A stretch of 64,000 nucleotides of DNA from Heteronotia binoei (taxonomy: Eukaryota), in the NCBI RefSeq assembly GCF_032191835.1, contig NC_083227.1, positions 27,714,001 to 27,778,000 on the forward strand. The letters run 5' to 3'. This document shows, one piece after another, positions 1 through 58,654 of this stretch. Under the pieces are notes generated by a model. That model was not told where the DNA came from. It was given only the letters and a program-made list of their open reading frames with translations, and did not search any database. The translations under genes and the position numbers were made by a program. How positions within the stretch are numbered: position 1 is the stretch's first letter; every line of letters starts with the position of its first letter.

Positions 1-517
1 AGGATTAGTATACGATCTCTTGCCCAGGCTTCAGCTTTCTGAAGATCTTGTATATTAGGACTGTTTGGCAAGGAGTTCTCATAAGCAGAGTTAGCAGTGT
101 CTGCGACTTTTGGGAAAGCAGATTGGATAGCAGAGAGTTGTTCCTTAATAGGAGTCAAGAATCGATTTATTTCAGCAAACATGTCTTCTTTAAGAGACGC
201 AAATAAGTCCTGGAATTCAGCAGGAGGAGTTATAGGTGAGTTTGTTTCCATTTCATCATCATCGGCGGCCCTCTTAGTTTCAGTTTGTTTTTGTGATGCA
301 GTTTTTTCCACTGTGTTCTCAGGCTTGAAACAAGTCTTTGCTACGCTTGTTTTTGCAGGAGATTGCTTCCCCTCCCCCCCCCCCTCAGTCTCAGAAGGGT
401 TCCCCATTGATGCTGAAGCAATAAAAAAGCCTTGGGAAAGATTTATGTTGGCAATTTAGGTAGTAGGGGAAGAGAGCTCGCCTAATGTGCATCCACACAA
501 CTGACGCCCCACCCCCC
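1..517 (-). mobile_element. 5' end of a probable L1 LINE (short 5'UTR plus start of ORF1, ATG at 407, open to the window edge)
   Basis: The minus frame from ATG 407 reads MGNPSETEGG...EFQDLFASLKEDMFAEINRFLTPIKEQLSAIQSAFPKVADTANSAYENSLPNSPNIQDLQKAEAWARDRILI with no stop to base 1. It has a low-complexity N-terminus then a heptad-like coiled coil, as in non-mammalian L1 ORF1p. It begins with a G-run at ~517, exactly where similarity to the paralogous ZNF ends stops. It is absent from the ORF track, probably because it runs off the window. Confidence 0.6.
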
Positions 518-1981
518 CTTTGTGTGTTCTTTGATGTTGTATCAGGTAGCATCTCCGTATGAATCTTTTCCCACAGTCCCTGCATCCATATTTTTTCTTT
601 TTGCTGTGGACTGTATGGTGTTCTGTAAGCCGTGACCTGACGGCAAAGTTCTTTCCACACTGCAAGCATTTAAATGGCTTCACTCCTGTGTGGATACTTT
701 GATGTACATTAAGGCTTGTGCTGTGACTGAACATTCTCCCACAATCCAGGCATTTATATGGCTTCTCCCCTGTGTGGATTCTTGCATGTGATGTAAGACC
801 TGTATGGATACGGAAACTCTTTCCACACTCCAAGCATTTATATGGCTTTTCTCCTGTGTGGACGCTTTGGTGTACCTTCAGGTGTGAGCTCTGACTGAAG
901 CCTTTACCACATTCCTGGCATTTATAGGGTTTCTCTCCAGAATGGATCCTTTGGTGGGAAACAAGGTGTGGTCTCTGAGTGAAGCGTTTTCCACACACTG
1001 TGCACTCGTAGGGTTTCTCCCCTGAGTGAATTCTCTGATGTGAAGTGAGGGCTGAGCTCCAACTGAAGGTCTTTCCACACTCCAGGCACTCATATGGTGT
1101 CTCCTTTGAATGGAATCTCTGATGGGAATTGAGGGCTGTGCTCCATCTGAAGGTCTTTCCGCACTCCAGGCACTCATACGGCTTCTCCTTTTTGTGGATT
1201 CTCTGATGGGAAGAGAGGCTTGCACTAACAGTGAAAGTCTTTCCACACAGCAAGCATTTGTATGGCTTCTCCCCTGAGTGGATTCTCTGATGGTAAGTGA
1301 AGGATACGTTCCACCTGAAGGTCTTTCCACACTCCAGGCACTCATATGGCCTCTCCTTTGTGTGGATTCTCTGATGGGAGGTGAGAGCTGTGCTCCAGCG
1401 GAAGCACTTTCCACATTCCAAACATTGATATTGTTTCTCCTCTGAATGGATTCTCTGATGTAAATTCAGAGCACTGTTATAGCTGAACCTCTTGCCGCAC
1501 TGTGAACATTGGCACGGTTTTTGCCCTGTTTGGGTTCTTTTATGGGAAGTAAGGTTTTCACTCATACTAAAAGATGTTTTGGACTCTGAACTCATGGAAC
1601 GCTCCTCCCTCATATGGATTCTCTGGTGAGAAGTGAGGCTTACGAGCCTGCCAAAGTCCTTTCCACATTCAGAGCATTTGTACGTTTCATTCCCTGCGTG
1701 GATTCTCTGATGGGAAGAAATGTTGGATTCATAGCTTAAGACTTCTCTGTGGGCAGAATGTTTATTCCTCCTCTTTCCTTTGTTATATGGTTCTTGGGCA
1801 GGATTTTCAAGGATGCCAGTCTGGAAAACTACAGCGTGATTACCTAACTTCTCTGCTTTGCTTTCGTCCTGCCTCTTTGATTGTTTTGGATTCCTGCAAG
1901 GCCTTTCCTCCACTTCATGGTCGGTCATTATGAAAGAGACCACACATCGCTCGCTATAATTCTCACCATCCTGCCTGTTAC
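456..1981 (-). CDS. Gene 1 zinc-finger exon (13 intact C2H2 fingers plus degenerate N-terminal fingers)
   Basis: ORF 456-1943 has CxxC-x12-HxxxH repeats and TGEKPY-type linkers. Acceptor ttcttccaccag|GT at 1982/1981 gives a phase-1 start (G|GT AAC AGG CAG...) in frame with the ORF. Stop TAA at 456-458. Confidence 0.96.
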
Positions 1982-4378: not shown

Positions 4379-4670
4379 AAGCAGCCTTGTACTGAATCAG
4401 CCACTCTTCTATCAAGGTCACTACTGTCCAGTTCAGCCAGCAGAGGCCCTCCAGAGACTCATGCTGGGATTGAACCAGGGGCCTTCTGCATGCCAAGCGG
4501 ACGCTCTACCACTGAGCCACGGCCCCTCCTCCAGCAACTGCAGATATTAAGACAGGAACACTTGAAGGTGCTGCCTACTGAGTCAGCTTCTTGCAGGGCC
4601 CTCATAAGCAAAATTAGACTATTCTAAATCTACTGACTGCTGGCCCATCAAGGTCAGTGTTATCTATTCT

Positions 4671-14029: not shown

Positions 14030-14194
14030 NNNNNNNNNNNNNNNNNNNNNNNNNNNNNNNNNNNNNNNNNNNNNNNNNNNNNNNNNNNNNNNNNNNNNNN
14101 NNNNNNNNNNNNNNNNNNNNNNNNNNNNNNNNNNNNNNNNNNNNNNNNNNNNNNNNNNNNNNNNNNNNNNNNNNNNNNNNNNNNNNNNNNNNNN
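14030..14194. other. Assembly gap (N run)
   Basis: 165 Ns inside the CR1 3'UTR. Confidence 1.
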
Positions 14195-15872
14195 CTGATG
14201 TACCTCCGCTCCATATTTTTATCTAACCCCCTCTTGAAGCTGGCTATGCTTGTAGCCGCCACCACCTCCTGTGGCAGTGAATTCCACATGTTACTCACCC
14301 TTTGGGTGAAGTACTTCCTTTTATCCGTTTTAACTTGACTGCTCAGCAATTTCATCAAATGCCCACGAGTTCTTGTATTGTGAGAAAGAGAGAAAAGGAC
14401 TTCTATTTTCTCCATCCCATGCATAATCTTGTAAACCTCTATCATGACACCCCACAGGCGACATTTCTCCAAGCTAAAGAGCCCCAAGTGTTTTAACCTT
14501 TCTTCATATGGAAACTGTTCCAACCCTTTAATCATTCTAGTTGCCCTTCTCTGCACTTTTTCCAATGCTATAATATCCTTTTTGAGGTGCGGTGACCAGA
14601 ATTGTACACAGTATTTCAAATGAGACCGCACCATCGATTTTTACAGGGGCATTATGATACTGGCTGATTTGTTTTCAATTCCCTTCCTAATAATTCCCAG
14701 CATGGCGTTGGCCTTTTTTATTGTAATCTCACACTGTCTTGACATTTTCAGTGAGTTATCTACCACGACCCCAAGATCTCTCTCTTGGTCAGTCTCTGCC
14801 AGTTCACACTCCATCAACTTGTATTTGTAGCTGGGATTTTTGGCCCCAATGTGCATTACTTCGCCCTTGGCCACAGTGAACCTCATCTGCCACGTTGATG
14901 CCCACTCACCCAGCCTCAACAGATCCCTTTGGAGTGCCTCACAATCCTCTCTGGTTCTCACCACCCTGAACAATTTAGTGCCATCTGCAAACTTGGCCAC
15001 TTCACTGCTTACTCCCAACTCCAAATTGTTTATGAGGAAGTTAAAGAGCATGGGACCCAGTACTGAGCCCTGCGGCACCCCACTGCTTACTGTCCTCCAC
15101 TGCGAAGACTGCCCATTTGTACTCACTCTCTGCTTCCTATTAATTAGCCAGTTTTTGATCCACAAGAGGACCTGTCCTTCTACTCCATGACTCTCAAGCT
15201 TACTAAGGAGCCTTTGATGAGGAACTTTTATCAAAAGCTTTCTGGAAGTCAAGGTAAACAACATCTATTGGGTCTCCTTTGTTCACCCCCTCAAAAAAAT
15301 GGAACAGGTGAGTGAGGCAAGATCTTCCCTTACAGAACCCATGCTGAGTCTTCCTCAATAACCCATGTTCATCAATGTGCCTACTCATTCTGTTCATGAT
15401 AATGGTTTCTACCAACTTTCCCGGTATTGAAGTCAGATTGACTGGCCTGTAATTTCCCGGATCTCCTCTGGAACCCTTTTTAAAGATGGGGGTGACATTT
15501 GCTACCTTCCAGTCCTCAGGAACGGAGGCAGATTTCAATGAAAGATTACATATTTTTGTTAGAATATCCACAAGTTCAACTTTGAGTTCTTTCAGAACTC
15601 TTCGATGTATGCCATCCGGACCTGGTGGCTTATTAGTTTTTAATTTGTCTATCAGTTGTAGGACCTCCTCTCTTGTCACCTCAATCTGACTCAGGTCTTT
15701 CAACACCCCTTCCAAAATAAGTGGTTCTGGAGCAGGCAAGCACTTCTCATCTTCCACAGTGAAGAGGCAAAAAATGGATTCAGCTTCTCAGCTATTTCCC
15801 TATCCTCCTTCAGTAATCCTTTTACCCCTTGGTCATCCAAGGGTCCCACTGCCTCCCTGGCTGGTTTCCTGC

Positions 15873-16493: not shown

Positions 16494-18871
16494 TAGGGTG
16501 GCCAGATCGTCCCGGTTGCCCGGGAAAGTCCCGATTCTGGCTCCCAATTCCCGCCTCCCGGGCTGGCTAAACCGGGACCATTAGAGGTCCCGGTTTAGCC
16601 GGCGGGCCGCGCGCGCGGTCGGGGAAGGCGGCGAGTGAGGGACCGAGTGTCCCTGCGCGTGCGCACGGCGGTGTGGCAGGCTCTGCGCATGCGCGGGGCC
16701 AGGAGAGTGGGCGGCGTAGGGCCCGCCACACCGCCGTGCGCACGCGCAGGGACGCTCGGTCCCTCACTCGCCGCCTTCCCCGACCGCACGCGCGGCCCAC
16801 CGGCTCCTCTCGCTGGCGTAGGGCCCCGGCGGCGGCAGAGGGGGAGGCGGCGGCGGAGGCCGTGGCCGGAGCGGGAGGCAGGCCGGCAGTGCCTGCGGTG
16901 GCGTGGCGGGAGGCCCTGGGTCGGTGGGCTCGGCCGCCTCCTCCTCAGCCGCCGCCAGCAGCACCAGCCGCCACTGCGCCTCCTGGCCAGCCCGCCCGCC
17001 CGGAGGGGAAGCCGTGCCCTGGGAGAAGGTAAGCCGGGCCCGGCAGGCAGGGAGGGAGGGGGCCGAAAGCGGGGGGGGCGGCTGGCGNNNNNNNNNNNNN
17101 NNNNNNNNNNNNNNNNNNNNNNNNNNNNNNNNNNNNNNNNNNNNNNNNNNNNNNNNNNNNNNNNNNNNNNNNNNNNNNNNNNNNNNNNNNNNNNNNNNNN
17201 NNNNNNNNNNNNNNNNNNNNNNNNNNNNNNNNNNNNNNNNNNNNNNNNNNNNNNNNNNNNNNNNNNNNNNNNNNNNNNNNNNNNNNNNNTCCGATGTTCA
17301 TGTCTTGCGGCTCTCAAACATCTGACCTTTATTCTGTGTTGCTCTTTTGTTAAGCAACTCTGGCCACCCCTGGAGTAGACAATACTGACTTTGGTGGACC
17401 CAAGCACTGATTCAGTGTAAGGGAGCTTTGTGTTTGTGTCTTCTGGTGCAATTTTGTTCTCAAATCCTGCATTTACTTCATCAGTATATGGGATAAGGCA
17501 CTTTCTCAACTGTGCTACATAATGCAGCCTATTTATTTTGTCCTGTTTGCTCTGTTGGCTCTATCTGCACCACCTTCATCACTTTCGGGGTGTGGATCCC
17601 CCAGTGGGGTGGGCTCCCGACTCCCTCCGCCGGCTGTTTCTGATAGCCCTGCGCCCCCTCTTTCATTTGATATGTGTCCCGTGCGGGTGCCACCCTCCCG
17701 CCGGGAGATGCCGCAAAATGAGCCCCCTTGAGGCTTATGGCGGCAGGGCTCGGGGGAAGCGAGCTAGACTGCTGTTCTTTTGAGGGGTTATAGAGTGTTT
17801 CGAGCCCGTCCCTGTGGCATCGGTCCCATCGTTGTGGGACCCAGGGGGCCGGCGCAGCGGCCCGCTGAAGCAGCCTGTCGGTCACTTCCGGGTTCCTGTC
17901 CTGCATCTCGACCTGTGTTATTAGTGACAGGCTGCTTCGGCGGGCCGCTGCGCCGGCCCCCTGGGTCCCACAACGATGGGACCGATGCCACAGGGACGGG
18001 CTCGAAACACTCTATAACCCCTCAAAAGAACAGCAGTCTAGCTCGCTTCCCCCGAGCCCTGCCGCCATAAGCCTCAAGGGGGCTCATTTTGCGGCATCTC
18101 CCGGCGGGAGGGTGGCACCCGCACGGGACACATATCAAATGAAAGAGGGGGCGCAGGGCTATCAGAAACAGCCAGCGGAGGGAGTCGGGAGACCACCCCA
18201 CTGGGGGATCCACACCCCGAAAGTGATGAAGGTGGCGCAGATAGAGCCAACAGAGCAAACAGGACAAAAGGGCGGGGTATAAATCTTAATATAAATAAAT
18301 AAATAAATAAATAAATAAAATAGGCTGCATTATGCAGCACAGTCTCACTGGAATCTCACTGGAATCTGACTGGCTTCTCAGCGTGGAACCCGTTCTCTCT
18401 AGTCTTCTCACTTTGAAAAAAGTAAAAAAAAGAGTTTTATTTAACTTTATTTCCCCCTTTCCCTCTCTATAAATAATCTTGGTGTTTCCGGCGGTGATAT
18501 TTGGGGGATTTTTGGGGACGTCACAGGAAGTGCTGTGAAGTCACTTCCTGTTTCCGGCAGTGGCATTTGTGGGAAATGATGTCATTTGTGGGAAATGATG
18601 TCACAGGAAGTGATGCCACTTCCTGCTTCCGGCAGGTGGCGCGGTGAAAATGATGTCACAGGAAGTGATGTCACTTCCTGCTTCCGGCAGGTGGCGCGGG
18701 GAAAATGATGTCACAGGAAGTGATGTCACTTCCTGTTTCCAGCGGTGGCATGCCGTCACTGGAAGTGACGTCACTTCCTGTTTCTGGCGTCTTGCGCTGC
18801 GCGCAGCGCGCACACATTCCTTCCCCCCTCAAGGTGTCCCTGGCTGGCCTGCAGATATTATGGCCACCCTA
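16494..18871. mobile_element. 2.4-kb non-autonomous hAT element nested in the CR1
   Basis: TIRs TAGGGTGGCCA/TGGCCACCCTA and a perfect 8-bp TSD AGTCCTTC at 16486-16493 and 18872-18879. No transposase ORF. GC-rich interior with inverted repeats. Confidence 0.9.
17088..17289. other. Assembly gap (N run)
   Basis: 202 Ns inside the GC-rich hAT interior. Confidence 1.
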
Positions 18872-21686: not shown

Positions 21687-22912
21687 CTATGGAGTGTTAG
21701 ATTCACCGGTGTGGTATAGCCAGGAAGCTTTATTAGGCAGCAGAGTGCACAAGGCTTACACACAGCAGCAGCAGCTTCTCAGTACTGGGTGTGCCAGCAG
21801 TTACATGGAACCTTCTGTCAGTTTCAAGCTAATAAATCCTTTATCTAGAGAACTACATTCTAAATAGTGTAGGTTGAGAGACAGGGATAGGATCTAATCT
21901 AATTAGCTATGGTGGATTCAGATGCAAAAGGCATGCCCTACATCCGCGGTGCCAAAGATGGAGAGCATTCTTCTGCTTTGTGTGTGTAAGAGAGATGTGC
22001 TAAGCTGGAAGAAAGGAAAGCTTGTCGCCAATGTACCCTCTAAGCTGCAGCCTTGTAAGCAAAAATTCTACTTTGTGAGCTACTAGTATTAAAGTTGTGA
22101 ACTACTGTATAAATAATTGTCCTCTGGGGTCATCCTTCCTGAGCTAAGACAAGATTGTGTGATTTGGGGGCTACAAATCTGTGAGCTAGCTCACGCTAAT
22201 TCAGCTTAGCGGGAACACTGCTTGTCACTAAGAACAGGAAGTCTTGTCCCACTGAACAGCATTCTATTTCAAAGGGTAGTATCAGATTGCAGGAAGAAAA
22301 GGATGTTGTGTGTATCCCGACCCCTCTATTTGTCTCTAAACATCTGCTGCTGTCTCTAAAGTCTGAGGCAGGGAACACCACACAGTCCTCCATTTCCCAC
22401 CTGGAGAATGGTCCAAATATGTGCCAGAATTCAGCTGAATACCAGGAGGCAAGTAAATTGTGAATTGCAGTCTTATCAGTTTTTCAATTCAATTTTAATA
22501 TGGTCCATAAGCAGCACAAACAGTGCATTGCACTCACTGAAAACAAAGGATACAATGTTGGGCTGTAGAAGGCTTGACATGGAAGGGAAAATCAGTAGCA
22601 CTCTGCGGGGAGTTTCCCATCTGCAAGTACATTTCTGAGAAATTAAACCCCTGCAGCTATTTGGTGTCGTTATTGCCTCACCTACCCCTTGTAGGGAGAC
22701 TATGAATAACACACAATGTTACAGGGTCAGGTTTAGCACAAATCTCGAGAACTTCTTCCTTATTGGGTTCCTGGCTGTTTATAAAGGTTTGAGAACTCCC
22801 TGAGAAACAAAAGATTCTTAACTGATGAATCAGTAAATAATTTGGGGTTTCTGTGACTTATATGACATCTGTAAGGCTTGCTGAATTTCAGAAGCTCTTA
22901 GTCTGATCATTT

Positions 22913-23326
<414 letters not shown>

Positions 23327-25180: not shown

Positions 25181-25446
25181 TGTTTGGTATAGTGGTTAAG
25201 TGTGCAGACTCTTATCAGAGACAACCAGGTTTGATCCCCCACTCCACCACTTGCAGCTGCTGGAATGGTCTTGGGTCAGCCATAGCTCTTGTAGAGATGT
25301 CCTTGAAAGGGCAGCTTCTGGGAGAGCTCTCTCAGCCCCACCTACCTCACAGGGTGTTTGTTGTGGGGGAGGAAGATAAAGGAGATTGTGAGCCGCTCTG
25401 ACGCTCTCAAGAGTGGAGGGTAGGATATAAATCCAATACCATCATC
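25181..25446 (+). mobile_element. Squam3-like SINE in the KRAB-ZNF intron of gene 2
   Basis: Same consensus, plus orientation, (ATC)n tail. Confidence 0.82.
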
Positions 25447-32095: not shown

Positions 32096-32969
32096 TGTGG
32101 CGGAACCGGCCCGATTCTGACTTCAGACCCGGTCCCGTCAGCTCCCTATTGAGTCGCCAACTCCTGGAGGGAGCTATTCCTCCTCCTCCCCTTGGGCTCG
32201 CTGCCACCACCTGCTCAGTCCCGGGGTTCAGATTGAGAGGAACAGGACTCCCAATCCCCCTCTCCTGCTATGAGGCTAGGCCTCAAGGTCCTCTGCCACC
32301 CTGCACTTGGGTTTCACAGAGACCTCAGCGCTTCTTTGGGGCACCCCTGGAGGATTGGCACCTTATCCAACTGCATGCCTTCCCCCTTCCCCGGGGCCCC
32401 CTTCTCAAAACAGCGTGGTCTAAAGCGGTCTGGGGATCTAGGTGGTACAGAGATTGATTGCCAGCATTTAAACAGTAAAAATATATTTATTTAAAAAGAG
32501 AAAAAGATAGGAAAAGGAAAACAAACCAAAAACAGTTGCCTTTAAAAAGTTAACACAGCCTAGTACAGCACAACACAGCTCAGCAAACAGCATAACAAAA
32601 TAAAGGTGGTTTTTAAACGCATCGTATTGTCCCTGGTCTATACTTGATCTGCCTAAGAGAATGACTTACTTTGTCTTACTGCCTGGAGGCCTCATTTTCC
32701 TGAGCAGGCCCCCCACAGGCCGGAGCTCAGAGGCAAGCAGCCTCTCTTCCCGAGCCTCTGCTGCAAACTGAGAAACTCTTCCTGCCTAGCACATGGCAAG
32801 AACAACAGCCCTTCCTGCCTCTCTAGGAGACTTTCCCCCTAGCGTTGTTGGTTTGGCTCAGGAAGGGAGGGGGGGAGTGAGGGGAAGGCTACAAAGCCTG
32901 CTGAATGGATTTACTGATCCCTGCCTTTTTGGATGAAGCACCAACACTCTCAGATGGCGTTTCTCCACA
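32096..32969 (-). repeat. 3' LTR (874 bp)
   Basis: Direct repeat of 35611-36483, preceded on the minus strand by the PPT AAGGAGGGGGAAG. Confidence 0.97.
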
Positions 32970-35610: not shown

Positions 35611-36483
35611 TGTGACGGAACCGGCCCGATTCTGACTTCAGACCCGGTCCCGTCAGCTCCCTATTGAGTCGCCAACTCCTGGAGGGAGTATTCCTCCTCC
35701 TCCCCTTGGGCTCGCTGCCACCACCTGCTCAGTCCCGGGGTTCAGATTGAGAGGAACAGGACTCCCAATCCCCCTCTCCTGCTATGAGGCTAGGCCTCAA
35801 GGTCCTCTGCCACCCTGCACTTGGGTTTCACAGAGACCTCAGCGCTTCTTTGGGGCACCCCTGGAGGATTGGCACCTTATCCAACTGCATGCCTTCCCCC
35901 TTCCCCGGGGCCCCCTTCTCAAAACAGCGTGGTCTAAAGCGGTCTGGGGATCTAGGTGGTACAGAGATTGATTGCCAGCATTTAAACAGTAAAAATATAT
36001 TTATTTAAAAAGAGAAAAAGATAGGAAAAGGAAAACAAACCAAAAACAGTTGCCTTTAAAAAGTTAACACAGCCTAGTACAGCACAACACAGCTCAGCAA
36101 ACAGCATAACAAAATAAAGGTGGTTTTTAAACGCATCGTATTGTCCCTGGTCTATACTTGATCTGCCTAAGAGAATGACTTACTTTGTCTTACTGCCTGG
36201 AGGCCTCATTTTCCTGAGCAGGCCCCCCACAGGCCGGAGCTCAGAGGCAAGCAGCCTCTCTTCCCGAGCCTCTGCTGCAAACTGAGAAACTCTTCCTGCC
36301 TAGCACATGGCAAGAACAACAGCCCTTCCTGCCTCTCTAGGAGACTTTCCCCCTAGCGTTGTTGGTTTGGCTCAGGAAGGGAGGGGGGGAGTGAGGGGAA
36401 GGCTACAAAGCCTGCTGAATGGATTTACTGATCCCTGCCTTTTTGGATGAAGCACCAACACTCTCAGATGGCGTTTCTCCACA
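35611..36483 (-). repeat. 5' LTR (873 bp)
   Basis: By eye it differs from the other LTR only at one substitution (tgtga/tgtgg) and one 1-bp indel (gagtattcc/gagctattcc). Confidence 0.97.
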
Positions 36484-36595: not shown

Positions 36596-37275
36596 GAACC
36601 ACATGGAATTCCCCAGGTTATAAATCTAAAACTTACAACATAAAATATCAGACAATTAAAATACTGATAAGGTGGTATATTCCACCAAATATGTTGCACC
36701 ACATGAGTCAAGACATTTCTCCATTATATAAAAAACAATGTGGGCTTGAAGGTAACTTTTTGCATTGCTGGTGGACCTGTAGATATATTAGACAATTTTG
36801 AAAATTACACTAATACATCTCCCATTTCTTCCTGAGATAGTTTTCTTAGGGAACTGGGTTAATTCTACAGGCAACAAGTATAAAATAGAAACGGTTCATA
36901 TTCTTTTATCAGTGGCCCACACATCTATTGCATCCTGCTGAATAGAGAACTCATTACCTACGATACCAGATTGGCAAAATAAGTTACGGGAATCCTTTGT
37001 GATACATAGAATTTCATTTAATGTTGATAATTTGATATCAACATATTTGTGACATAGTTTCCAATTGTTAACTATCTCAATCCAGAAGAAATCATTCCTA
37101 AGAATAAGGTTTATAAAAGAATGTATTTTTAATGTTATGCAATGCTTATCCTATACCTCTGCACATTAATTTTAATCTTCATCATTGCACTGTATAATTG
37201 ATATGATTTTGGAATGTGATTTTGACGTTAAAGTATACAGTATAATGTATAATTATATACAAACAAGACATTAAA
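36596..37275 (+). mobile_element. Degenerate L1 3' fragment
   Basis: Encodes YNIKYQTIKILIRWYIPP...CGLEGNFLHCWWTC, an L1 ORF2 C-terminal motif. Absent from the paralogous segment at ~21270. Confidence 0.75.
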
Positions 37276-40734: not shown

Positions 40735-41208
40735 TGGCTGAACACCACAGGAGGCGAGTAAATTGTGAATTGCACTCTTATCAAATTTTCAATTCAGTTT
40801 TAATATGGTCAACAGCCAGCACAAATAGTGCATTTCAATCACTGGGAATGAAGGATACAATGCTGGGCTGTAGAAGGCTTGAAATGCAAGAGTATATCTG
40901 TAGCATTTTGCGGGGAGTTTCCCATCTGCAAGTACATTTCAGAGAAATTAAACCCCTGCAGCTATTTGGTGTTATTGTTGTCTCATGGGATTATCCGCTA
41001 AACCCATGAAAAGCAAATTGTGCCATTTTATGTGGACAGAGCATCTACCCCTTGTAGGGATATTATGAATAATGAGCAATATTATAGGGCCAGGTTTACC
41101 ACAGATCTCTTGAGCACTTTTCCCTACAAGGGGTAGATGCTTCTGTAATTCGGAGCTTCTATGACTTGCCATCCATAAGGCTTGTTGTATTTCAAGAACT
41201 AGTCATTT

Positions 41209-41955
41209 ATTTTGGGGGGGGGGGCAGAAATTTAGCATACAATATTGAGTTAGAGCGATGGTCCCAGTTACGGAAAACAAACATTAGAATTACAAGATCT
41301 GCTGTGTTTAAAGAAAAAATATATAAAATGTTTTACCGTTGGCACATGACACCAGATAAGCTTGCAAAAATGTACCCGGGTTTATCAAATATATGCTGGA
41401 AATGTGAAAATCAGATAGGTACCTATTTTCATGCATGGTGGTCTTGTAAAAAAGTTAAGGGTTATTGGATACAAGTTCATGAGTTATTGCAAAAAAAAAA
41501 TTTAAAGCGGTTATTCCATTTAAACCAGAGTTGTTCTTGTTAAATTTGTTACCTCATAATATGGAAAAACAACTGAAATATATTACACTGTAAATGGTTA
41601 CCACTGTGAGAATTATATTTGCAAGATATTGGGAAAAAAAGGGATTTACCAACTATGGATGAACTTATGGCTAAGATATTGGATATAGCAGAAATGGACA
41701 TTCTTACAAATATGTTGAAAAAAGAATCTAACCAACTAGGAAACTGGACTCTATATTATGACTGGATACGTAAAAAGTAATTAGATAATAATGTCAAGAG
41801 ATTAATAATTGAGAGGTGAGAAATTAAAGGGGTCAAAAACAAGTTTAAAGAGATATTTGTTGTATATTGCTGCTTTGATATTTGTAGAAACCGCATTCTC
41901 CATCCTCTATTTTTTTTGTTATGAAAATAATAAAAGATTAAATATCTTTTTAAAA
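41209..41955 (+). mobile_element. 5'-truncated L1 in the 3'UTR of gene 3
   Basis: YRWHMTPDKLAKMYPGLSNICWKC...GTYFHAWWSC, the L1 ORF2 C-terminus, with an A-rich tail. 15-bp TSD AAGAACTA(G/A)TCATTT at 41194-41208 and 41956-41970. Confidence 0.88.
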
Positions 41956-41970
41956 AAGAACTAATCATTT

Positions 41971-42391
<421 letters not shown>

Positions 42392-47650: not shown

Positions 47651-48207
47651 CCTCCCCCTTAAACCAAACCACACAAATACCAGAGGAGGAGCAGACTGTT
47701 CCAATTACATACAAATATGTATGCCACAAATATACCCACAGTGTAGAATGGTACATTGGAATGTATTTCTCTGGCCCGCCGCCCGGGAACTGGGGAAATC
47801 ACTCTGCAAAGCCAAGACCCCCTACTTCAAAAAATAACATGGCCTCCATGCTGAGAGGGGATGGAGTATAATGGCAGGGTCTCAATTAATCTCTGCACTC
47901 CATAATTAAAGATACATCTATCCATCAACCACCAAGCTTTGATATATTTTTTTCACTATATCTTATCCCAGACTTAAACCCAAACAAATGGTAACCATAT
48001 AAACTAAGCTTTTTGTTCCTGTTTGGCTCTACAATCTGTTAAAACATCTCATTATGCTGCATGCTAATTTCCTGCTCATCCTCTATTTATGTGTATGGAC
48101 CAGTGTTCCTGCTAAGCTGAGTTTAAGTGAGCTAGCTCACAATTTTTAAGCCTCTGGTTCACACATTTTGTCTTAGTTCAGGAAAAATGGCCCCAGAGCA
48201 AACTAGT

Positions 48208-49195
48208 TAACATAAGAGAAGCCATGTTAGATCAGGCCAATGGCCCATCCAGTCCAACACTNNNNNNNNNNNNNNNNNNNNNNNNNNNNNNNNNNNNNNN
48301 NNNNNNNNNNNNNNNNNNNNNNNNNNNNNNNNNNNNNNNNNNNNNNNNNNNNNNNNNNNNNNNNNNNNNNNNNNNNNNNNNNNNNNNNNNNNNNNNNNNN
48401 NNNNNNNNNNNNNNNNNNNNNNNNNNNNNNNNNCTCTGCTCCATATTTTTATCTAAACCCCTCTTGAAGGTGGCTATACTTGTGGCCGCCACCACCTCCT
48501 GTGGCAGTGAATTCCACATGTTAATCACCCTTTGGGTGAAGAAGTACTTCCTTTTATCCATTTTAACCTGTCTGCTCAGCAATTTCATCAAATGCCCATG
48601 AGTTCTTGTATCGTGAGAAAGGGAGAAAAGTACCTCTTTCTCTACTTTTTCCATCCCATGCATTATCTTGTAAACCTCTATCATGTCACCCCGCAGTCGA
48701 CGTTTCTCCAAGCTAAAGAGCCCTAAGCGTTTCAACCTTTCTTCATAGGGAAAGTGTTCCAGCCCTTTAATCATTCTAGTTGCCCTTTTCTGCACTTTCT
48801 CCAATGCTATAATATCCTTTTTGAGGTGCGGCGACCAGAACTGCACACAGGACTCCAAATGAGACCGCACCATCGATTTATACAGGGGCATTATGATACT
48901 GGCTGATTTGTTTTCAATTCCCTTCCTAATAATTCCCAGCATGGCGTTGGCCTTTTTTATTGCAAGTGCACACTGTCTTGACATTTTCAGTGAGTTATCT
49001 ACCACGACCCCAAGATCTCTCTCTTGGTCAGTCTCTACCAGTTCACACCCCATCAACTTGTATTTGTAGCTGGGATTCTTGGCCCCAATGTGCATTACTT
49101 TGCGCTTGGCCACACTGAACCTCATCTGCCACGTTGACGCCCACTCACCCAGCCTCAACAGATCCCTTTGGAGCGCCTCACAATCCTCTCTGTTT
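48208..49195 (-). mobile_element. 5'-truncated CR1 LINE
   Basis: ORF 48232-49206 is the CR1 ORF2 C-terminus (YKSMVRSHLESCVQFWSPHLKKD...LFSLEKRRLRGD). It is closely similar to the 13945 copy. Contains the gap 48262-48433. Confidence 0.92.
48262..48433. other. Assembly gap (N run)
   Basis: 172 Ns at the same CR1 3'UTR position as the 14030 gap. Confidence 1.
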
Positions 49196-50114
49196 CTCAG
49201 ATGCACTCAAGAGTTATTTAACTGCGCTTCGTTTCTTGGAGAGAAGGCCAAAGGCTGTGTTCAGAAGGCTGCTTGAGACTGTTGCTATACTAGGGCTACT
49301 AATATCCTCAGATGGGCTATGGATGCCAATCTCCAGGTTTCCCTAGAATTTCGGCTCATCTGCAGACTAGAGATCCATTCCTAGGGACAAAATGGGGGCT
49401 TTGGAGGGTAGACTCTATGGCATTGTACCCCATTGATTTCCCTGTCCTTTCCGGGGGGTCTATCCCCAAATCTACAGGAGTATCCTATCCTGGATCTGCA
49501 ACCCTACCTCCCACATACCCTGATAGTGGCTAGGGCAAACCAGGCAATCCTAAGGTGGGGTGTGGAAATCTCCTGGAACTACAACCGATCAGCACACTGC
49601 AGAGATCAATTGTCCAGGAAAGCAGGGTTCCTTTGGAGGGGCGACTCCAGGGCATGACACCTAGTTGAGATCCCCACCCTCCACCAAATCTCATCATCTT
49701 CAGCCCCCTCCCCTCACAAAAAAAATCACCACAGATTTCTCTATCTGGGATTTGGCATCTGTAGCTCTCAAGTAGTGCTTCTGATCTCACTAGTCATCTG
49801 GACAATAGATGCCTAGATAAAGGGATGTAGAATTCTGTAAACAGCTATAAACATCCTAAGACCTGATCTACAATGCCCCCTCTCAATAATAATAATAATT
49901 ATTATTAATAATGTATGGTTGCCAGGTCAGTGTTGGAAAATACTTGGAGACTTTGTGGGTGGAGCCGGGAAAGGGCAGGGTTTGGGGAAGGGAGGGGCCT
50001 CAGCATGGTCCAGTGCCACAGTGTCCACCCTTCCCAGCAGCCATTTCCTCCCGGGGAGCTGATCTCTGCCAGCTGGAGATCAGTTGGAAAGGTGGGAGAT
50101 CTCCAGGCTCCACC

Positions 50115-50274
50115 TGAATCATAGAGTTGGAAGGGACCTCCAGGGTCATCTAGTCCAACCCCCTGCTCAAAGCAGGAAACTCACAAATACCTCCCCCCAA
50201 ATTCACAGGATCTGCATTGTTGTCAGATGGCCATCTAACCTCTGTTTAAAAACCTCCAAGGAAGGAGAACCCAT
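50115..50274 (-). mobile_element. CR1 3' fragment (second subfamily)
   Basis: gaatcatagagttggaagggacctccagggtcatctagtccaacccc, same family as 55220-55663 and 62583-63140. Confidence 0.85.
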
Positions 50275-53200
50275 TGTTAAGCCAATTGCCCTAAAAATAG
50301 CGTTCTGGGGAATTTAGATTGGTGGGCAATCAGCCTTTCAGTGAGATCAAAAACCTATTCATACAGAAGGTGTCTTCTTTGAGAATTACCCTCTTAATAA
50401 CGAGGAGACTTGGTCTAATAATAATAAGGGGTTTTATTATGAACTACAAGCAAACATACAAGAGTATAAACTCATCCAACATACATACATGTCTAAGAAA
50501 AATAGGATTGAAATAGACAGAAGTAAACATATGGGTAGACAAACAGGGTGATAATTACCTAGCGTAGTCTTTGAGGAAGGCTCCAATGGCGACGAAAAAG
50601 GGAATGGGGGAGATGGCCCTCAACTGATCAGATATCGGGGGTGTATCTAAACAGCAGGGTAGGGGTACTGTCAGAGACACACGTGTGGGGAGTTGGATCA
50701 GAGGTTATAAGGACTACCTTGAACCCTTAGGGGGTAGAAGATCGAGCAGATTATGAAACAGGGTCACATGGGACATGATGCTGTACCACATGGTACATTA
50801 CCTCAGAAAAGGGGAGGCTCCATAAGTGACCGTTTTGGGCAAGGAATGAGTGAGTCCTGGGTAGAGGGGATTAACATAATCCACTCAAATTTATCTAAAA
50901 AGGACAATAGAGAGTCGAATTGAAACCTAAGGTGACACCCAATCTATACAATGGCTCTGGTCTTGGAATACAGCTCCTCTTCCTCTTCTGGCTGGAACCT
51001 TTCTTTATCAAGAGTTCCGCTTGACAAAGACTTGGGCAATTGGACAGAATGCACACCCAAGATATGCTTGATTGCCTTATGCAGATCTTTGCAACAGCTG
51101 TGGTGTACGTGGGCCTCTTGCTTCTCTGTCATGGAGTCTGGCACCGCAGGAAGATGGTCGCTGGTGATGTTAAGACTACCAACGTGGCTTTCATGGAAAA
51201 GGATGGAAACCGCTTGCCTGGGCAGTTCCTGACAGCGCAATTTCTTCCATTGCAACAGCTGAGATGGTGCACGCACGGAGCTGCTGGGAGCTGGTCTCCA
51301 CTACTGGCTAGCACACTTCCAGAGATATAGAGTGCCGTCATAACACTGAGGCTGTTAGTATCCATATAAGTCTCTTAGGAAACGTTGGTACACCCATGTT
51401 TCAGAACAGATATGTGAGAGCTGCCTCTCCAGGCATCCTGGCAACCAAACCAGTGATCACGATGTCCGTATAAATGAATAATAGGGGGCTCTCCATCACA
51501 GTGCCCCCCCTTCAAGACTTCCTTCACTGGATGGAGATGGGGTCTTGACTTATCACAGGGTTCATAGCTGGTCTTGACAGGTGACGTGTTCGTTAAGAAC
51601 CAGGCTTTAATCGGGGTGCCCCTCCTAACTAAAACATGGAGCCAATAAGCCAAACTATTCAAAACTGCAATTAAAAAAATTCAGTATCCAATGGGCCAAA
51701 GGCTACTTCCTCAAAGGCTAGGACGTGGGGACAATTAATATTAGCTACATTGTTCCATATTCATCATATTTGACACATGGCTGCAACTTCATAATCAGTG
51801 GTATATAAAAGGGTAATATTTTATAAAGTCATTGCTATCATTCAGATGAGATAAATCACAGTAATTGATTGGAAAAATACATAAATATATCTGAATTCAT
51901 GGTTACAAGTCAAACTCACATTATCTACCTACAACTAAACTAATAAATTTGTTTCTTATTCGCTATTTAACCTTGAGTCTTCTTTTCTTCTCTCCCGCCC
52001 CCCGCCCCCCGATAAGCTTCTTGTGCTGAGGGCCGGGGAGGCACTGCTCCAGTACCTCTATTATGTAGGTGCATTTCCTGGTGGAGGGAGAGAGAGAGGA
52101 TGCCTGGTGGCATTCATTATTCTTCCCACCCCCCTTGTATCTAGAATGTCCAGGTTTGAAGCTAAGTCTCAACGCGGAAACTCCCGATGCCTCCCGAATA
52201 AGATCAGGTTTCTCCGCCTCCCTTAGTTCTGGCTTCACATAGCACAGCCAGACCCAAATAGAGGGAGACCTCAATCTGTATATGCAAACTGGCGATCGCA
52301 AAGGCTTCTGGGAAAGATATTTGGATCACTATCTTGCCTAACATGCTTTAATCCAACCCATCCAACCTTAAATACAGTAAGTTTTCTCTTGACCCAGACT
52401 CTAAGGTTCTATTTTACAGTGACTGGATCTTATACACTATGTCCTTAAGGTATGTCTGCTCGCATGCCTTGAGAGCTGTTATTGCAGGTGATCATGCTTC
52501 CTGGAAGAAGATGGCCACCGGGTTGACCCTCCGAACCAGGGAGCCTGCACATGCACGGTGCCCCTCCCCCGGCAATGGGTTTGGAGAAGCCAGCCTAGTG
52601 TGCCTCCTCCCCTTTTTAATCTAGAGCCTTTGTGGCTCTGAGGGGCCTGGTGTCAGCCTGGCTCCTTTTTAGGGCCTGCTTGGAGTCCTTCACTGGTCGG
52701 GGGACTTCCACTATACAAAGTCAAAAACAGAACGATCCATGCTCATACACAATCAGTACAGCTTGCCACTCACTCTGGGGTCTGTCCTCCAACAAGCCTT
52801 TCTCTTACTTGAAGTGGGAGGGGCTCTTACAGTCTTGTACCACACAACCTATTATACGTGTTCAAGCTTTCTTCGGGTTTGGTCAGCCCTACTTGGAGCG
52901 TGGGCTGAATTATGCACATTGATCCGATTGCTTGCAATGAATGATGGTAAAACATATTTATTAACAATATTTTAAAAACACAGCCATAAACAGTTGCTGC
53001 CTCAATCCTTAAAAGCATTTGTACCCAATTGACCTACTGTGCTCTGATGCCTGTCGTTTACTCTGGGCACATTTGGACACTTAAACCTGACAATGGATCA
53101 GACTGGATGGGCTGCTGGACGAGACGCCCATGCTAAGGCTATCTTCTCCGAACCCACTGGGAAGTGCAGGGGCACGCCCCTCGTTTCTGCCATTGATGGT

Positions 53201-53975
53201 CTGGTTCTGGCCTCCCTCGGGGTCCTGATACAGGTTCAGACTCCCCGGTTCGGCTGATAGACTACCTCAAAGCCAGCCCTCTCAGGGCTGGCCCACCTTT
53301 TCCTTGTAAAGGAATAGGCTTAAAAATACATATACAGTCATGTCCAATTCTCAAATTATTATTGTAGCGCTATCTCCCGCCCAGGAGATGGCAACTGTTG
53401 ACTGGACACATCACATATCTGACGTACTAAGCGTTGCCTCAGGTTGGCGGCTGAGGCGGCATATTGGAGAAGGAGGAGGGAATATGCAAATCACTTTCCT
53501 ACTGAAATGGAAATTCCAAGCCTATGTTTGTATCGGCCTCACCAGAAAACCCACAACATATTGATACTGGCAAAACATAATTCACAGTAACATTTTAGTG
53601 GTGGATTGGGGAACACACAGCAGCGCTTAGTCGCTGTAACTGATAAGCACTCTCCATCGCGTGGCCCGGCTTGGCTGTGATGGGCCCAACCATTCTTCTC
53701 CCTCCATTTTCCATCTCTCTCTGCATCCGGGACTTGGGCTGAGGCATGTACAGAGTGTGCAAATGCAAATGCCCTGAGCCCGAGGTCGTCTGGGGGCAAT
53801 AATTAGGACATTAATCAAACAAAACAGTCGTGTTTGTGGCTTGAAGACCAAAAGAGACATTTAATTGTCGGAAAAGAAAATGGAAGACCTGATTTGCAAG
53901 AAAACAATGACTCTGCCGGCCTAGTTTTAACCAAAAGGCTAGGTGGCGGAAAAAGGATGTGCTGAAAATAATGCC
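50275..53975 (-). mobile_element. Unassigned ~3.7-kb insert, possibly an ERV/LTR element remnant (candidate LTR 50275-50937)
   Basis: Non-paralogous, SINE-free block. The left ~660 bp reads TGTCACC...TTAACA on the minus strand, with a TATA-like site near 50707 and AATAAA near 50433. No second LTR or recognisable ORF. Confidence 0.35.
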
Positions 53976-54357
53976 AGGTAGCAGAGATATGAACTTTATA
54001 AAGACAAGAACAATTAAGAGATTTTTAAAAACTTAAAACTTGCTTAAAAAATTAGCACTTGTTGGTCCTAATGGTGCTTTCTTTGCATCTCTCCTGTGAG
54101 ATCCAGGGAACTGGGCATAAGCTGCTCTGGCTCTTTCCTTCCTTCCCCAGGGGACCAGGAGGGGGAGGAGTCTCAGCCAATAGGCTTAGCTCAGTAGCTC
54201 TGCTGTGTGATTGAGCAAGCCGGGCAGAGTTAGCTGTGATGCAGAAGGAAGCAAGAGAGAGGGAGAAGGAAGCAGATGGCAGCCAGATGCTTGGGGGCCT
54301 AATAGGAGCCCACCTGGGGCCTGATTCAGCCCCTGGGCCACATGTTTGACATTCCTG
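53975..54357. mobile_element. Partial hAT-Charlie-type MITE (inverted)
   Basis: Reverse-complement match to 26836-27444, ending gtttgacattcctg. Confidence 0.75.
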
Positions 54358-54483
54358 GATTACTGCATTTGAACTGCAGGTGGAAAACAACCAAGAATTT
54401 TCCTGTGATCTCTGGTGGTAAAACAGCCTGCCAAGAGGGCCACACTCTAGGAATCTCTGCTGCCTAGTCTCTATGATGTAGCC

Positions 54484-55066
54484 CAGGGGAGTCAAACATG
54501 CAGTTTGGGGGCCAAATCAGGCCCCCGGAGGGCTCCTATCAGGCCCCCAAACAACTGGACCCCTTCTCCCTATATCTTGCTTTGCAAGGCTTGCTCATCA
54601 ATTGCACAGGAGCTACAGAGGAGCACAGGAGCTACAGAGCAAAGTCTCTATATTCTCCATTGGCTGAGGCAATGGGTAGGAAGGGGCCGGGGAGGATACC
54701 TTACTTTGCCAGGATCTCTCAATTGCACAGCAGAGCTACTGAGCCAAGCCTCTCTTCCTTCTATTGGCTGAGTCTCCTCCCCCTCCTGATTCCCTGGGAA
54801 AGGAAGGAAAGAGCCAGAGTTTCCTTTGCCCAATTCCCTAGATCCCATGGGAGAAATACAAAGAAAGCCAATGAGTGCTAACGGTTTAAACATGTTTTTA
54901 GTTTAAAAAAAAAATTGTGTTTGTGTTCTTTGTAAAATTTCTCTTTCTGCTACCTGTACACACATGGCCCAGCCTGACATGGCTCAGCCCAACCTGACAT
55001 GGCCTGGCCCAACAATGTCATTTTTGTCAGATTCGGCCCTCATAACAAATGAGTTTGACACTCCTG
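54484..55066. mobile_element. hAT-Charlie-type MITE
   Basis: TIRs CAGGGGAGTCAAAC/GTTTGACACTCCTG. Same family as 26836-27444. Confidence 0.85.
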
Positions 55067-55219
55067 CTCTAGGCTGATCCTGCACTGAATAGGGGGTTTG
55101 GACAGATGGCCTGTATGGCCCCTTCCAACTCTATGATTCTACAATATAACTTGGGGCTTCTGTGACATATTTGACATCTGTAAAGCTTGTTGTATTTCAA
55201 AAACTCCTAGTCTGATCAT

Positions 55220-55663
55220 GGTGGTGGTGAGGGGTCCGGAGACCAAATCCTACAAGGAAAGGTTGAAGAAGCTGGGCTTGTTTAGCCTGGAGAGGCGGCA
55301 GAGAGGTGATATGATCACCATCTTCAAGGACTTGAAGGGCTGTCATTATAGAGGATGGTGTGGAATTGTTTTCTGTGGTCCCAGAAGGTAGGACCAGAAC
55401 CAATGGGTTGAAATTTAATCAAGAGAGTTTCTGGCTCAACTTTAGGAAGCACTTCCTGACGATTACAGCAGTTTCTCAGTGGAACAGGCTTCCTCAGGAG
55501 GTGATGGGCTCTCCTTCCTTGGGAGGTTTTTGAACAGAGGCTGGATGGCCGACAGTAATGAAGATCCTGTGAATTTAGGGGGAGGTATTTGTGAATTTCC
55601 TGCATTGTGCAGGGGGTTGGACTAGATGACCCTGGAGATCCCTTCCAACTTTATGATTCTATG
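55220..55663 (+). mobile_element. CR1 3' fragment overlapping the stop codon of gene 4
   Basis: CR1 ORF2 end (ggcttgtttagcctggagagg...) through the terminal ccttccaactttatgattctatg. The flanks rejoin to the paralog consensus gatcat-t-tctatg. Confidence 0.9.
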
Positions 55664-57397
55664 TCTGTGATTCCTCCTCTTTGTGCATTCTTTGATGTTG
55701 TATCAGATACCATCTCTGTACAAATCTTTTCCCACAGTCCCTGCATTCATGTTTTTTCTCTTCACTGTGGACTATGTGGTGTTTTGTGAGCTGTGACTTG
55801 GTGGCGAATTTCTTTCCACACTGCAAGCATTTAAATGGCTTCACTCCTGTGTGGATACTTCGATGTATATTAAGGCTTGTGCTGTGACTGAACCTTCTCC
55901 CACAATCCAGGCATTCATATGGCTTCTCCCCTGAGTGGATTCTTTCATGTGATTTAAGGTGTGTAGAGATACGGAAACTCTTTCCACACTCCAAGCATTT
56001 ATATCGCTTTTCTCCTGTGTGGACGCTTTGGTGCACCTTCAGGTGTGAACTCTGACTGAAGCCTTTCCCACATTCCTGGCATTTAAAGGGTTTCTCTCCA
56101 GAGTGGATTCTTCGGTGGGAAGAAAGGTGTGGATGCTGAGAGAAGCATTTCCCACACACTGTGCATTCGTAGGGTTTCTCCCCTGAGTGAGTTCTCTTAT
56201 GTAAAGTGAGGGATGAGGTCCAACTGAAGGTCCTTCCACACTCCAGGCACTCATAGGGCTTCTCCTTTGTATGGAATCTCTGATGGGAAGAGAGGGCCGA
56301 ACTGACAGAGAAGCTCTTCCCACAAATCAAGCATTTATATGGTTTCTCCCCTGAGTGGGTTCTCTGGTGTGAAGAGAGGGCTGTGCTCCAACTGAAAGTC
56401 CTTCCACACTCCAGGCACTCATAGGGCTTCTCCTTTGTGTGCAGCCTCTGATGGGAATTGAGGGATGTGCTCCAGTGGAAGCTCTTCCCACATTCCAAGC
56501 ATTGATATCGTTTCTCCCCTGAATGGATTCTCTGATGCATATTCAGAGCACTCTTACAGCTGTACCTCTTGCCACACTCTAAACACTGGCAAAGTTTTTG
56601 CCCTCTGTGCGTTCTTTGGTGTATCTTCAGGCTGGAGCTCTGACTGAAGCCTTTCCCACACTCCTGGCATTTATAAGGTTTTTCCCCAGAGTGGATTCTT
56701 CGGTGGGAAATAAGGTGTGGACTCTGAGAGAAGCATTTCCCACACACTGTGCACTCAAAAGGTTTCTCTCCTGAGTGAGTTCTCTGATGTGAGGTGAGGG
56801 CCGCGCTCCGGCAGAAGCTCTTTCCACATTCCAAACATTTATATTGTCTCTCCTCTGAATGGACTCTCTCATGCAAATTCAGATGACTCCTACAGCTGAA
56901 TCTCTTGCCACACTCTGAACACTGCCATGGTTTTTGCCCTGTGCGGGTTCTTTGATGGGAAGTAAGGTTTTCACTCAGACCCAAAGTATTTTCACATTCT
57001 GAACTCTCGAATGGTCTCTTTCTCTTATGGATTTTCTGATGAGAAGTGAGGCTTGCAAGCCTGCCGAAGCCCTTTCCACATTCAGAGCATCTGTACGTTT
57101 CATCCCCTGCATAGATCCTTGGATGGAAAGAAAAGCTGGATTCACAAACCAAGACTTCTCTGCTTTCAGAATGTTTAGTCCTCCTCTTTCCTTTGCTGTA
57201 TTTTTCTTGAGCTGGATTTTCAAGGGAGATGCCAGCCTGCAAAGCCACAGACTGATTCCCTGACTTCTCTGCTCTGCTTTCTTCCCACCTTTTTGACTGT
57301 TCTGGATTTCTGGAAGGCTTTTCCTCTGCTTCGTGGTTGGTCATTAGGAAAGAGACCACACACTGCTTGCTATAATTTTCCTCATCCTGCCTGTGAC
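55659..57397 (-). CDS. Gene 4 zinc-finger exon (16 intact fingers)
   Basis: ORF 55659-57359. Acceptor ttcctccag|GT at 57398/57397, phase 1 and in frame. Confidence 0.96.
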
Positions 57398-58077: not shown

Positions 58078-58338
58078 AGAAGAAGAAGATGATATTGGAT
58101 TTATATCCCGCCCTCCACTCCGAAGAGTCTCAGAGCGGCTCACAATCTCTTTTACCTTCCTCCCCCACAACAGACACCCTGTAAGGTGGATGGGGCTGAG
58201 AGAGCTCTGACAAAGGCTGCCCTTTCAAGGACAACCTCTGCCAGAGCTATGGCTGACCCAAGGCCATGCTAGCAGGTGCAAGTGGAGGAGTGGGGAATCA
58301 AACCCGGTTCTCCCAGATAAGAGTCTGCACACTTAACC
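58078..58338 (-). mobile_element. Squam3-like SINE
   Basis: Same consensus. Confidence 0.85.
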
Positions 58339-58654
58339 ACTATACCAAATTGGCTCTCTCTGAAGACTTTGTTGTTTCATTTAGCATTCCCTCAGTGATT
58401 TTTTCCCTTCCCGCCCACTGTTTGTCATTTTACATTTCAGCTCTGGATTTTCAATTTCAATTTCAGACCTTTAATGGCATAGCATAAGATACAGAAAGAC
58501 TGGAATGGACAACATAAATCAGGATTAAACTTAGGTTGAACATAAAATCAAGCATAGCCAGAGTTGTGTTGGAGAATGGCGGCCAAGAATTTTGCTACAG
58601 CACAGGTAACTTTTTAATTAAGAGTCGTTCAGGAAAAATCAGCTGGCAGCCCCA

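What the first reader, a model, noticed from the sequence alone, without database searches (positions are those of the whole stretch)
41194..41990. Three independent LINE insertions hit the same ~15-bp site at the ancestral stop in three of four paralogs
Seen: the reconstructed ancestral end on the minus strand is CAC AAA G^AG GAG GAA TCA YRG ^A^AA TGA TCA GAC. The gene 1 L1 junction is at the first caret, one edge of the gene 3 L1 TSD at the second, and the gene 4 CR1 at the third. The elements differ in family, part and orientation, so the events are independent. Only gene 2 is empty. In gene 3 the site is already 3'UTR, so coding selection cannot explain that case. Inference: either a local endonuclease or breakage hotspot (nearby TC|AAAG and TTC|AAGAA fit L1-type nicking), or selection for TE-derived 3' ends, for example placing ZNF mRNAs under TE-directed small-RNA control.
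Basis: partly seen in the sequence, partly recalled or inferred. Interest (0 to 1): 0.7.

Follow-up and report, generated by a model that had tools for sequence, protein, structure and literature searches.

The report
Three LINE insertions near ZNF stop
In a gecko cluster of four tandem zinc-finger genes, three copies each picked up a different retrotransposon fragment within 15-45 bases of the gene's end. The events are real and independent, but this DNA is so full of insertions, and the site so resembles the CR1 element's own tail, that it is most likely an ordinary coincidence.

Summary
Four minus-strand ZNF paralogs share a 3' end. Gene 3 carries a 747-bp antisense L1 3' fragment with a 15-bp target-site duplication. 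Gene 4 carries a 444-bp antisense, 5'-truncated CR1 3' end, after which the flank resumes. Gene 1 is joined to the 5' end of a sense L1 that runs off the window. Gene 2 is empty.

"Same 15-bp site" is true only for the nearest junction edges. The initiating nicks span about 44 bp, and the CR1 junction is ambiguous over 10 bp.

The locus is saturated with lineage-specific insertions, about 1.2-3 per kb per copy. Under a uniform null, three lineages fall within 16 bp somewhere in this locus in 4-20% of simulations, and within 44 bp in 22-72%. A second triple cluster of three independent SINEs within about 83 bp lies in the intron.

The CR1 site has a local cause: the ancestral end encodes TCTRTGATTC, a 10-nt copy of the CR1 octamer tail (6 hits in the window, 0.24 expected). 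The L1 sites fit TTCTT|GA nicks.

I found no evidence for selection or small-RNA control. An earlier scan note on gene 1's L1, on this same window, agrees. Ordinary; low interest.

The parts
518..584 (-). Gene 1: last zinc finger (522-584) and the retained tail, ending CACAAAG at 518
1..517 (-). Gene 1 insert: 5' end of a sense-oriented L1. G-run at 506-517, short 5'UTR, ORF1 start at 405-407, ORF1 N-terminus at 3-407. It runs off the window start.
   Evidence: The ORF's relatives, aligned with it (A3), match human and mouse L1 ORF1p at E 2.4e-7 and 3.2e-7. The atlas gave only a weak lead.
22907..22933 (-). Gene 2: empty ancestral site (…AAAGAGGAGGAATCATAGAAATGA)
22912..22921 (+). CR1-tail-like decamer TCTATGATTC at the empty site of gene 2
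   Evidence: 6 hits in the window against 0.24 expected
41956..41970 (-). Gene 3: target-site duplication, gene-side copy (AAATGATTAGTTCTT)
41209..41955 (+). Gene 3 insert: 5'-truncated L1 (ORF2 C-terminus plus 3'UTR, short A tail), antisense to the gene. Filler ATTTT plus 11 G at 41209-41224.
41214..41540 (+). Open remnant of the L1 ORF2 C-terminal cysteine-rich domain
   Evidence: E 1.3e-8 to human ORF2p residues 1094-1165; zf-RVT at E 0.027, below the cut-off.
41194..41208 (-). Gene 3: target-site duplication, distal copy (AAATGACTAGTTCTT). The first-strand nick TTCTT|GAAA lies at 41194/41193.
55220..55663 (+). Gene 4 insert: 5'-truncated CR1 3' end (hairpin plus octamer tail), antisense to the gene, no TSD
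55664..55673 (+). Gene 4: CR1-tail-like decamer TCTGTGATTC of the target, abutting the CR1 tail. The junction is ambiguous over these 10 nt.
55146..55219 (-). Gene 4: the ancestral 3' flank resuming after the CR1 (86% to gene 2 at 22837-22910)
55065..55142 (+). Second CR1-type 3' end, where gene 4's flank homology stops. It has a 6-nt GATTCT overlap with the empty sites of genes 2 and 3.

Best explanation
Three separate, essentially neutral target-primed reverse-transcription events hit the 3' end of three copies of a tandemly duplicated ZNF gene, in a region saturated with retroposon insertions. Their closeness is mostly coincidence, helped by three ordinary factors.

1. The ancestral end (…GAG GAA TCA YAG A…) is, on the opposite strand, a 10-nt copy of the CR1 3' octamer repeat. 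The nicked target strand can therefore base-pair with the CR1 RNA tail and prime cDNA synthesis there (inferred mechanism).

2. Two pyrimidine-run|GA sites (TTCTT|GA) that fit L1 endonuclease lie about 44 bp apart on opposite strands. The roughly 15-bp staggered cuts point inward, which brings the two L1 5' junctions to within 15 bp of each other. This is shown for gene 3 and inferred for gene 1.

3. In the intact genes 1 and 4, any insertion further upstream would destroy zinc fingers and be purged. The first tolerated position is therefore just behind the last finger.
For: Elements and junctions.

Insertion density: the U2/U3 chain has 6448 aligned bp with 9 and 5 clean lineage-specific segments plus 5 two-sided gaps. 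The other pairs are similar.

Simulations: a cluster of at least 3 lineages somewhere in 5.5 kb occurs with P = 0.04/0.11/0.20 at 16 bp, 0.12/0.33/0.52 at 31 bp and 0.22/0.52/0.72 at 44 bp, for low, mid and high insertion rates.

A second triple cluster exists: three independent SINEs within about 83 bp of the intron.

CR1-tail decamer: 6 hits against 0.24 expected. Three are inside CR1 tails and two are at the paralogous gene ends. The second CR1-type junction 75 bp downstream also overlaps its target, by 6 nt.

Literature: the CR1 3' hairpin and octamer microsatellite are conserved (PMC4316615). The 3' ends of CR1, L2 and RTE elements overlap their targets, which is explained by RNA-target base pairing, and L1 TSDs are mostly 13-15 bp (PMC6007223). 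Near-parallel and precise parallel insertions are documented (PMC554112, PMC10531181).
Against: At a pre-specified 16-bp window the chance of 3 of 4 lineages being hit is only about 1.2e-4, and the stop codon is a biologically marked place. The coincidence is therefore not trivial if the site had been named in advance.

Two other CR1 3' junctions in the window that have empty paralogous sites show little or no overlap. A further TCTGTGATTC at 39335 carries no CR1. The tail mimic is therefore neither necessary nor sufficient.

Gene 1's TSD and nick site are inferred, not seen. Only four paralogs could be examined.
Confidence: 0.7

Rival explanations
1. A true insertion hotspot. Something about this place beyond short target motifs (chromatin at ZNF 3' ends, a fragile or bent DNA segment, transcription-termination R-loops) makes it nicked or broken unusually often, so that LINEs of different clades land there.
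For: Three different elements have junctions within 15 bp, and a pre-specified-site probability is about 1e-4. A fourth LINE-type junction lies 75 bp downstream in gene 4.
Against: After allowing for all positions in the locus the coincidence is expected in 4-20% of cases. The initiating nicks are about 44 bp apart and on both strands. Gene 2 is empty. A comparable triple cluster occurs in the intron. No further paralogs could be obtained.
Confidence: 0.17
2. Selection for TE-derived 3' ends. Copies whose mRNA ends in LINE sequence were favoured, for example because antisense LINE sequence places them under piRNA or siRNA control or supplies a polyadenylation site.
For: Two inserts are antisense to the gene. 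The filler plus TSD in gene 3 creates AATAAA on the gene strand at 41206-41211. Gene 1 takes its last 20 codons and stop from the L1.
Against: Gene 3 is already truncated by an upstream stop at 42392, so there is little to select. Gene 4's protein is virtually unchanged. The three inserts differ in orientation and part, so they share no common function. No RNA or small-RNA evidence could be obtained.
Confidence: 0.05
3. The events are not three independent events at one site. Either the CR1 predates the gene 1/gene 4 split, or gene conversion or assembly error shaped the pattern.
For: Genes 1 and 4 are sisters in the last two fingers (87%, against about 70% to genes 2 and 3). The site behind gene 1's L1 is off the window. 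Relationships differ between segments, which suggests exchange between units.
Against: Even then the L1 of gene 1, the L1 of gene 3 and the CR1 are three distinct events with different elements, orientations and junctions. Gene 3 has a clean TSD, and gene 4 has both junctions with a resuming flank.
Confidence: 0.05

Closest known systems
Near-parallel and precise parallel independent retroposon insertions (Alu in primates, PMC554112; CHR SINEs in toothed whales, PMC10531181)
   Same: Different elements, sometimes in opposite orientation, insert independently at or within tens of bp of the same homologous site. This is attributed to chance plus endonuclease target preference.
   Different: Here the homologous sites are paralogs inside one genome, not orthologs in different species. 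Two LINE clades (L1 and CR1) are involved, not one SINE family.
Microhomology between LINE 3' tails and the target at 3' junctions (Ichiyanagi and Okada 2008, as summarised in PMC6007223)
   Same: The CR1 tail and the target overlap at the 3' junction. This is consistent with the nicked target strand pairing with the RNA tail to prime reverse transcription.
   Different: Reported overlaps for CR1, L2 and RTE are one to several bp. Here the target holds 10 nt of the octamer repeat, joined 2 nt out of perfect register.
CR1 3' UTR module: hairpin plus octamer microsatellite (PMC4316615)
   Same: All four copies in the window have the conserved hairpin directly followed by TCTATGAT-type repeats. 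They are 5'-truncated and lack a TSD.
   Different: Only the 3' 444 bp is present, so no RT or EN coding sequence is available for assigning a subfamily.
L1 target-primed reverse transcription with 13-15 bp TSDs at TT|AAAA-like sites
   Same: Gene 3 has a 15-bp TSD, 5' truncation, a short A tail and a pyrimidine-run|purine nick site.
   Different: The nick site is TTCTT|GAAA, which matches only 4 of 6 positions of the mammalian consensus. There are 16 nt of filler (ATTTT plus 11 G) at the 5' junction.

Membership tests
L1 (gene 3 insert) | ORF2 C-terminal cysteine-rich domain homologous to L1 ORF2p | tested here: met
   E 1.3e-8 to human ORF2p residues 1094-1165, with the CWxC…H…C pattern kept; zf-RVT at E 0.027, below the cut-off.
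L1 (gene 3 insert) | Target-site duplication of about 7-18 bp flanking the insert, with an A-rich 3' end | tested here: met
   15-bp TSD with 14 of 15 positions identical. The + strand 3' end is …TTTTTAAAA(AA). TSD range from PMC6007223.
L1 (gene 1 insert) | ORF1p (coiled coil, RRM, CTD) homology | tested here: inconclusive
   Only the first 135 residues lie in the window. There was no direct Pfam or PDB hit. Relatives at E 4.6e-7 to 6e-4, aligned with it, match L1 ORF1p at 2.4e-7, but through their RRM/CTD part, which the window lacks.
L1 (gene 1 insert) | TSD and poly(A) at the far end | not testable with these tools
   The element runs off the window start.
CR1 (gene 4 insert) | 3' UTR hairpin followed by an octamer microsatellite | tested here: met
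   a hairpin of 8+2+4 pairs is kept in 4 copies, followed by a TCTATGAT-type tail. Feature as described in PMC4316615.
CR1 (gene 4 insert) | Severe 5' truncation and no target-site duplication | tested here: met
   444 bp only, and the flank resumes with 1-2 nt lost and no duplication. PMC2169234 states that CR1 elements lack a TSD.
CR1 (gene 4 insert) | CR1-clade RT/EN coding sequence | not testable with these tools
   The fragment holds only the 3' end.
Insertion hotspot | Insertion frequency at the site exceeds what the local TE density gives | tested here: inconclusive
   locus-wide P is 0.04-0.20 at 16 bp. Only four paralogs were available, and further ones could not be retrieved.

The most novel reading that the evidence does not exclude
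The conserved C-terminal/stop sequence of this ZNF subfamily is an antisense mimic of the CR1 tail, flanked by two L1 endonuclease sites. It acts as a genuine recurrent landing pad, so that across the whole subfamily and related geckos LINEs are captured at the stop far more often than in the neighbouring flank. This would repeatedly remodel the 3' ends of TE-controlling zinc-finger genes.
Probability: 0.12. Interest if true: 0.55.

Novelty: new member of a known kind. Interest (0 to 1): 0.22.

Why it matters
If the site were a real hotspot, it would give a sequence-level landing pad for two LINE clades at the end of genes that are themselves thought to police transposons. As it stands, it is a worked example of near-parallel insertions among paralogs, and a caution for anyone using retroposon presence or absence as homoplasy-free characters. 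It is also a clean case where a CR1 3' junction coincides with a 10-nt copy of the CR1 tail in the target, which fits the base-pairing model for priming.

Tried and rejected
1. Getting more paralogs or orthologs through proteins. A word search with the last 147 residues returned only generic many-finger ZNFs at no more than 59% identity, and none had the subfamily tail. The subfamily-specific spacer found nothing. The last three fingers as a short query found no candidate.

2. Reads. There is therefore no RNA 3' ends, no polymorphism data and no paralog survey from contigs.

3. Direct identification of gene 1's ORF by Pfam, PDB and the atlas failed or was weak. It was solved only transitively.

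4. Looking for gene 4's flank further downstream: it does not resume within 48000-55146.

5. The bacterial promoter/terminator scan was irrelevant.

6. I considered a shared ancestral insertion for genes 1 and 3 and rejected it. The orientations are opposite, the junctions differ, and gene 2, the sister of gene 3, is empty.

7. The N stretches (14030-14194, 17088-17289, 48262-48433) were left alone.

Full report
WHAT IS THERE

The window holds four tandem units of about 18 kb each, and each unit carries a C2H2 zinc-finger exon on the minus strand. The last fingers end at about 522 (gene 1), 22934 (gene 2), 41989 (gene 3) and 55683 (gene 4).

In the last two fingers, genes 1 and 4 are sisters (87%) and genes 2 and 3 are sisters (88%). 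Identity between the pairs is about 70%. Other segments give star-like or different relationships, which suggests exchange between units. Genes 2 and 3 both stop about 400 bp upstream of the ancestral stop (ORF ends at 23327 and 42392).

THE THREE INSERTS

Gene 3. The insert at 41209-41955 (747 bp) is bracketed by AAATGAYTAGTTCTT at 41956-41970 and 41194-41208. On the + strand it encodes an open 109-residue remnant that matches the C-terminal domain of human L1 ORF2p (residues 1094-1165, E 1.3e-8; zf-RVT weak). A 3'UTR and a short A run follow. At the 5' junction there are 16 filler bases (ATTTT plus 11 G). It is a 5'-truncated L1, antisense to the gene, with a 15-bp TSD, which is the modal L1 TSD length (PMC6007223). 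The first-strand nick is at the far TSD edge, TTCTT|GAAA on the minus strand.

Gene 4. The insert at 55220-55663 aligns with two other copies in the window. All copies, plus a fourth related one, share a conserved hairpin followed directly by TCTATGAT-type repeats. This is the 3' module described for amniote CR1 (PMC4316615). The element is on the + strand with its tail abutting the gene, is 5'-truncated and has no TSD. The ancestral flank resumes at 55219 and matches gene 2 at 86% for 74 bp. It then ends at a second CR1-type tail and nested transposons, and does not resume.

Gene 1. After CACAAAG (518) come a G-run, about 110 bp of leader and an ORF that runs off the window. The ORF has no direct Pfam or PDB hit and only a weak atlas lead to L1 ORF1 families. 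An exhaustive search found 291-338-residue relatives (E 2.6e-6 to 1.7e-4). A profile of these plus the query matches human and mouse L1 ORF1p at 2.4e-7 and 3.2e-7. The match is through their RRM/CTD part, so the assignment is transitive. The far end and TSD cannot be seen. A 15-bp TSD would put the nick at TTCTTT|GATG on the + strand (inferred).

Gene 2 is empty.

HOW CLOSE THE EVENTS REALLY ARE

The 15-bp figure joins the 5' junction of gene 1's L1, the 5' junction of gene 3's L1 and the 3' junction of the CR1.
- gene 1: about 15 nt upstream (inferred);
- gene 4: about 15 nt downstream, ambiguous from 5 to 15 nt;
- gene 3: about 29 nt downstream.

That is a spread of about 44 bp, on both strands.

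IS IT MORE THAN CHANCE?

I chained the four units pairwise. For units 2 and 3 there are 6448 aligned bp, of which about 2.2 kb is exon. This pair has 9 and 5 clean lineage-specific segments plus 5 two-sided gaps. That gives roughly 1.2-3 insertions per kb per lineage.

Simulating four independent uniform Poisson lineages on 5.5 kb, a window holding junctions from at least 3 lineages appears somewhere with these probabilities for low, mid and high rates:
- 16-bp window: 0.04 / 0.11 / 0.20
- 31-bp window: 0.12 / 0.33 / 0.52
- 44-bp window: 0.22 / 0.52 / 0.72

Only for a window named in advance is it rare (1.2e-4 for 16 bp).

The same four units show another triple: three independent copies of the abundant 280-bp SINE within about 83 bp of the intron. 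They lie at 3509-3790, at 25182-25446 in the opposite orientation, and at 58082-58357. Real insertion is also not uniform, which raises the clustering further.

LOCAL CAUSES

On the + strand the ancestral end reads TCTRTGATTC, which is 10 nt of the CR1 octamer repeat. The window has 6 such decamers against 0.24 expected. Three are inside CR1 tails, one is at gene 2's empty site (22912), one abuts the CR1 in gene 4 (55664), and one is elsewhere (39335). The nicked minus strand ending …GAATCACAGA can therefore pair with the CR1 RNA tail. Overlaps at CR1, L2 and RTE 3' junctions, and this pairing model, are described in the literature (PMC6007223). The join is 2 nt out of perfect register.

The second CR1-type junction, 75 bp downstream, overlaps its target by 6 nt (GATTCT). 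Two further CR1 junctions that have empty paralogous sites show little overlap. The mimic therefore helps but is not required.

For the intact genes 1 and 4, purifying selection against insertions inside the finger array makes the position just behind the last finger the first tolerated one (inference).

SELECTION AND SMALL RNA

Nothing supports this. Gene 4's product changes from …EES(Q/W/stop)(K) to …EESQT. Gene 1 gains 20 L1-derived residues. Gene 3 is already truncated.

No RNA could be examined. I worked beside those places afterwards.

FURTHER PARALOGS

VERDICT

The excess over chance is unproven and is plausibly explained by saturation, a CR1-tail mimic, L1-type nick sites and survivorship. 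This is a known kind of event: near-parallel insertions (PMC554112, PMC10531181).

Noticed in passing
window 3509-3790, 25182-25446, 58082-58357: Three independent insertions of the same abundant SINE family (about 280 bp), one in the opposite orientation, lie within about 83 bp of the ancestral intron just 5' of the ZNF exon in units 1, 2 and 4. Unit 3 is empty.
   Followed up: partly
window 506-517 and 41209-41224: Both L1 5' junctions carry G-runs: GGGGGGGTGGGG in gene 1, and ATTTT plus 11 G in gene 3, although the latter L1 is 5'-truncated inside ORF2. This may be untemplated filler.
   Followed up: no
window 41206-41211 (minus strand): The filler plus TSD at gene 3's L1 junction creates a canonical AATAAA hexamer on the gene strand. 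Whether it is used is unknown.
   Followed up: no
window 55065-55142, 53975-54956: Gene 4's 3' flank homology ends after 75 bp at a second CR1-type 3' end. That element is itself interrupted by an element with inverted repeats at 53975-54233 and 54700-54956. The flank never resumes within 48000-55146.
   Followed up: partly
window 32096-32969 and 35611-36483: Two 874-bp direct repeats 99.8% identical (LTRs) flank a 765-codon ORF with no Pfam hit. This is a very young LTR-type element between units 2 and 3.
   Followed up: no
window 4663-4845 and 36625-36798: Two more L1 ORF2 C-terminal remnants are only 39% and 24% identical in protein to the one in gene 3. Several divergent L1 lineages have therefore inserted in this cluster.
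   Followed up: no
window, units 1-4: Which paralogs are closest changes from segment to segment. The 3' end groups 1+4 and 2+3, while the intron blocks are star-like or group 1+3. This suggests gene conversion or unequal exchange between the tandem units.
   Followed up: partly
window 14030-14194, 17088-17289, 48262-48433: Three N stretches. Two of them sit at homologous places of units 1 and 3, next to a block that is 92% identical (14204-14960 and 48434-49199).
   Followed up: no
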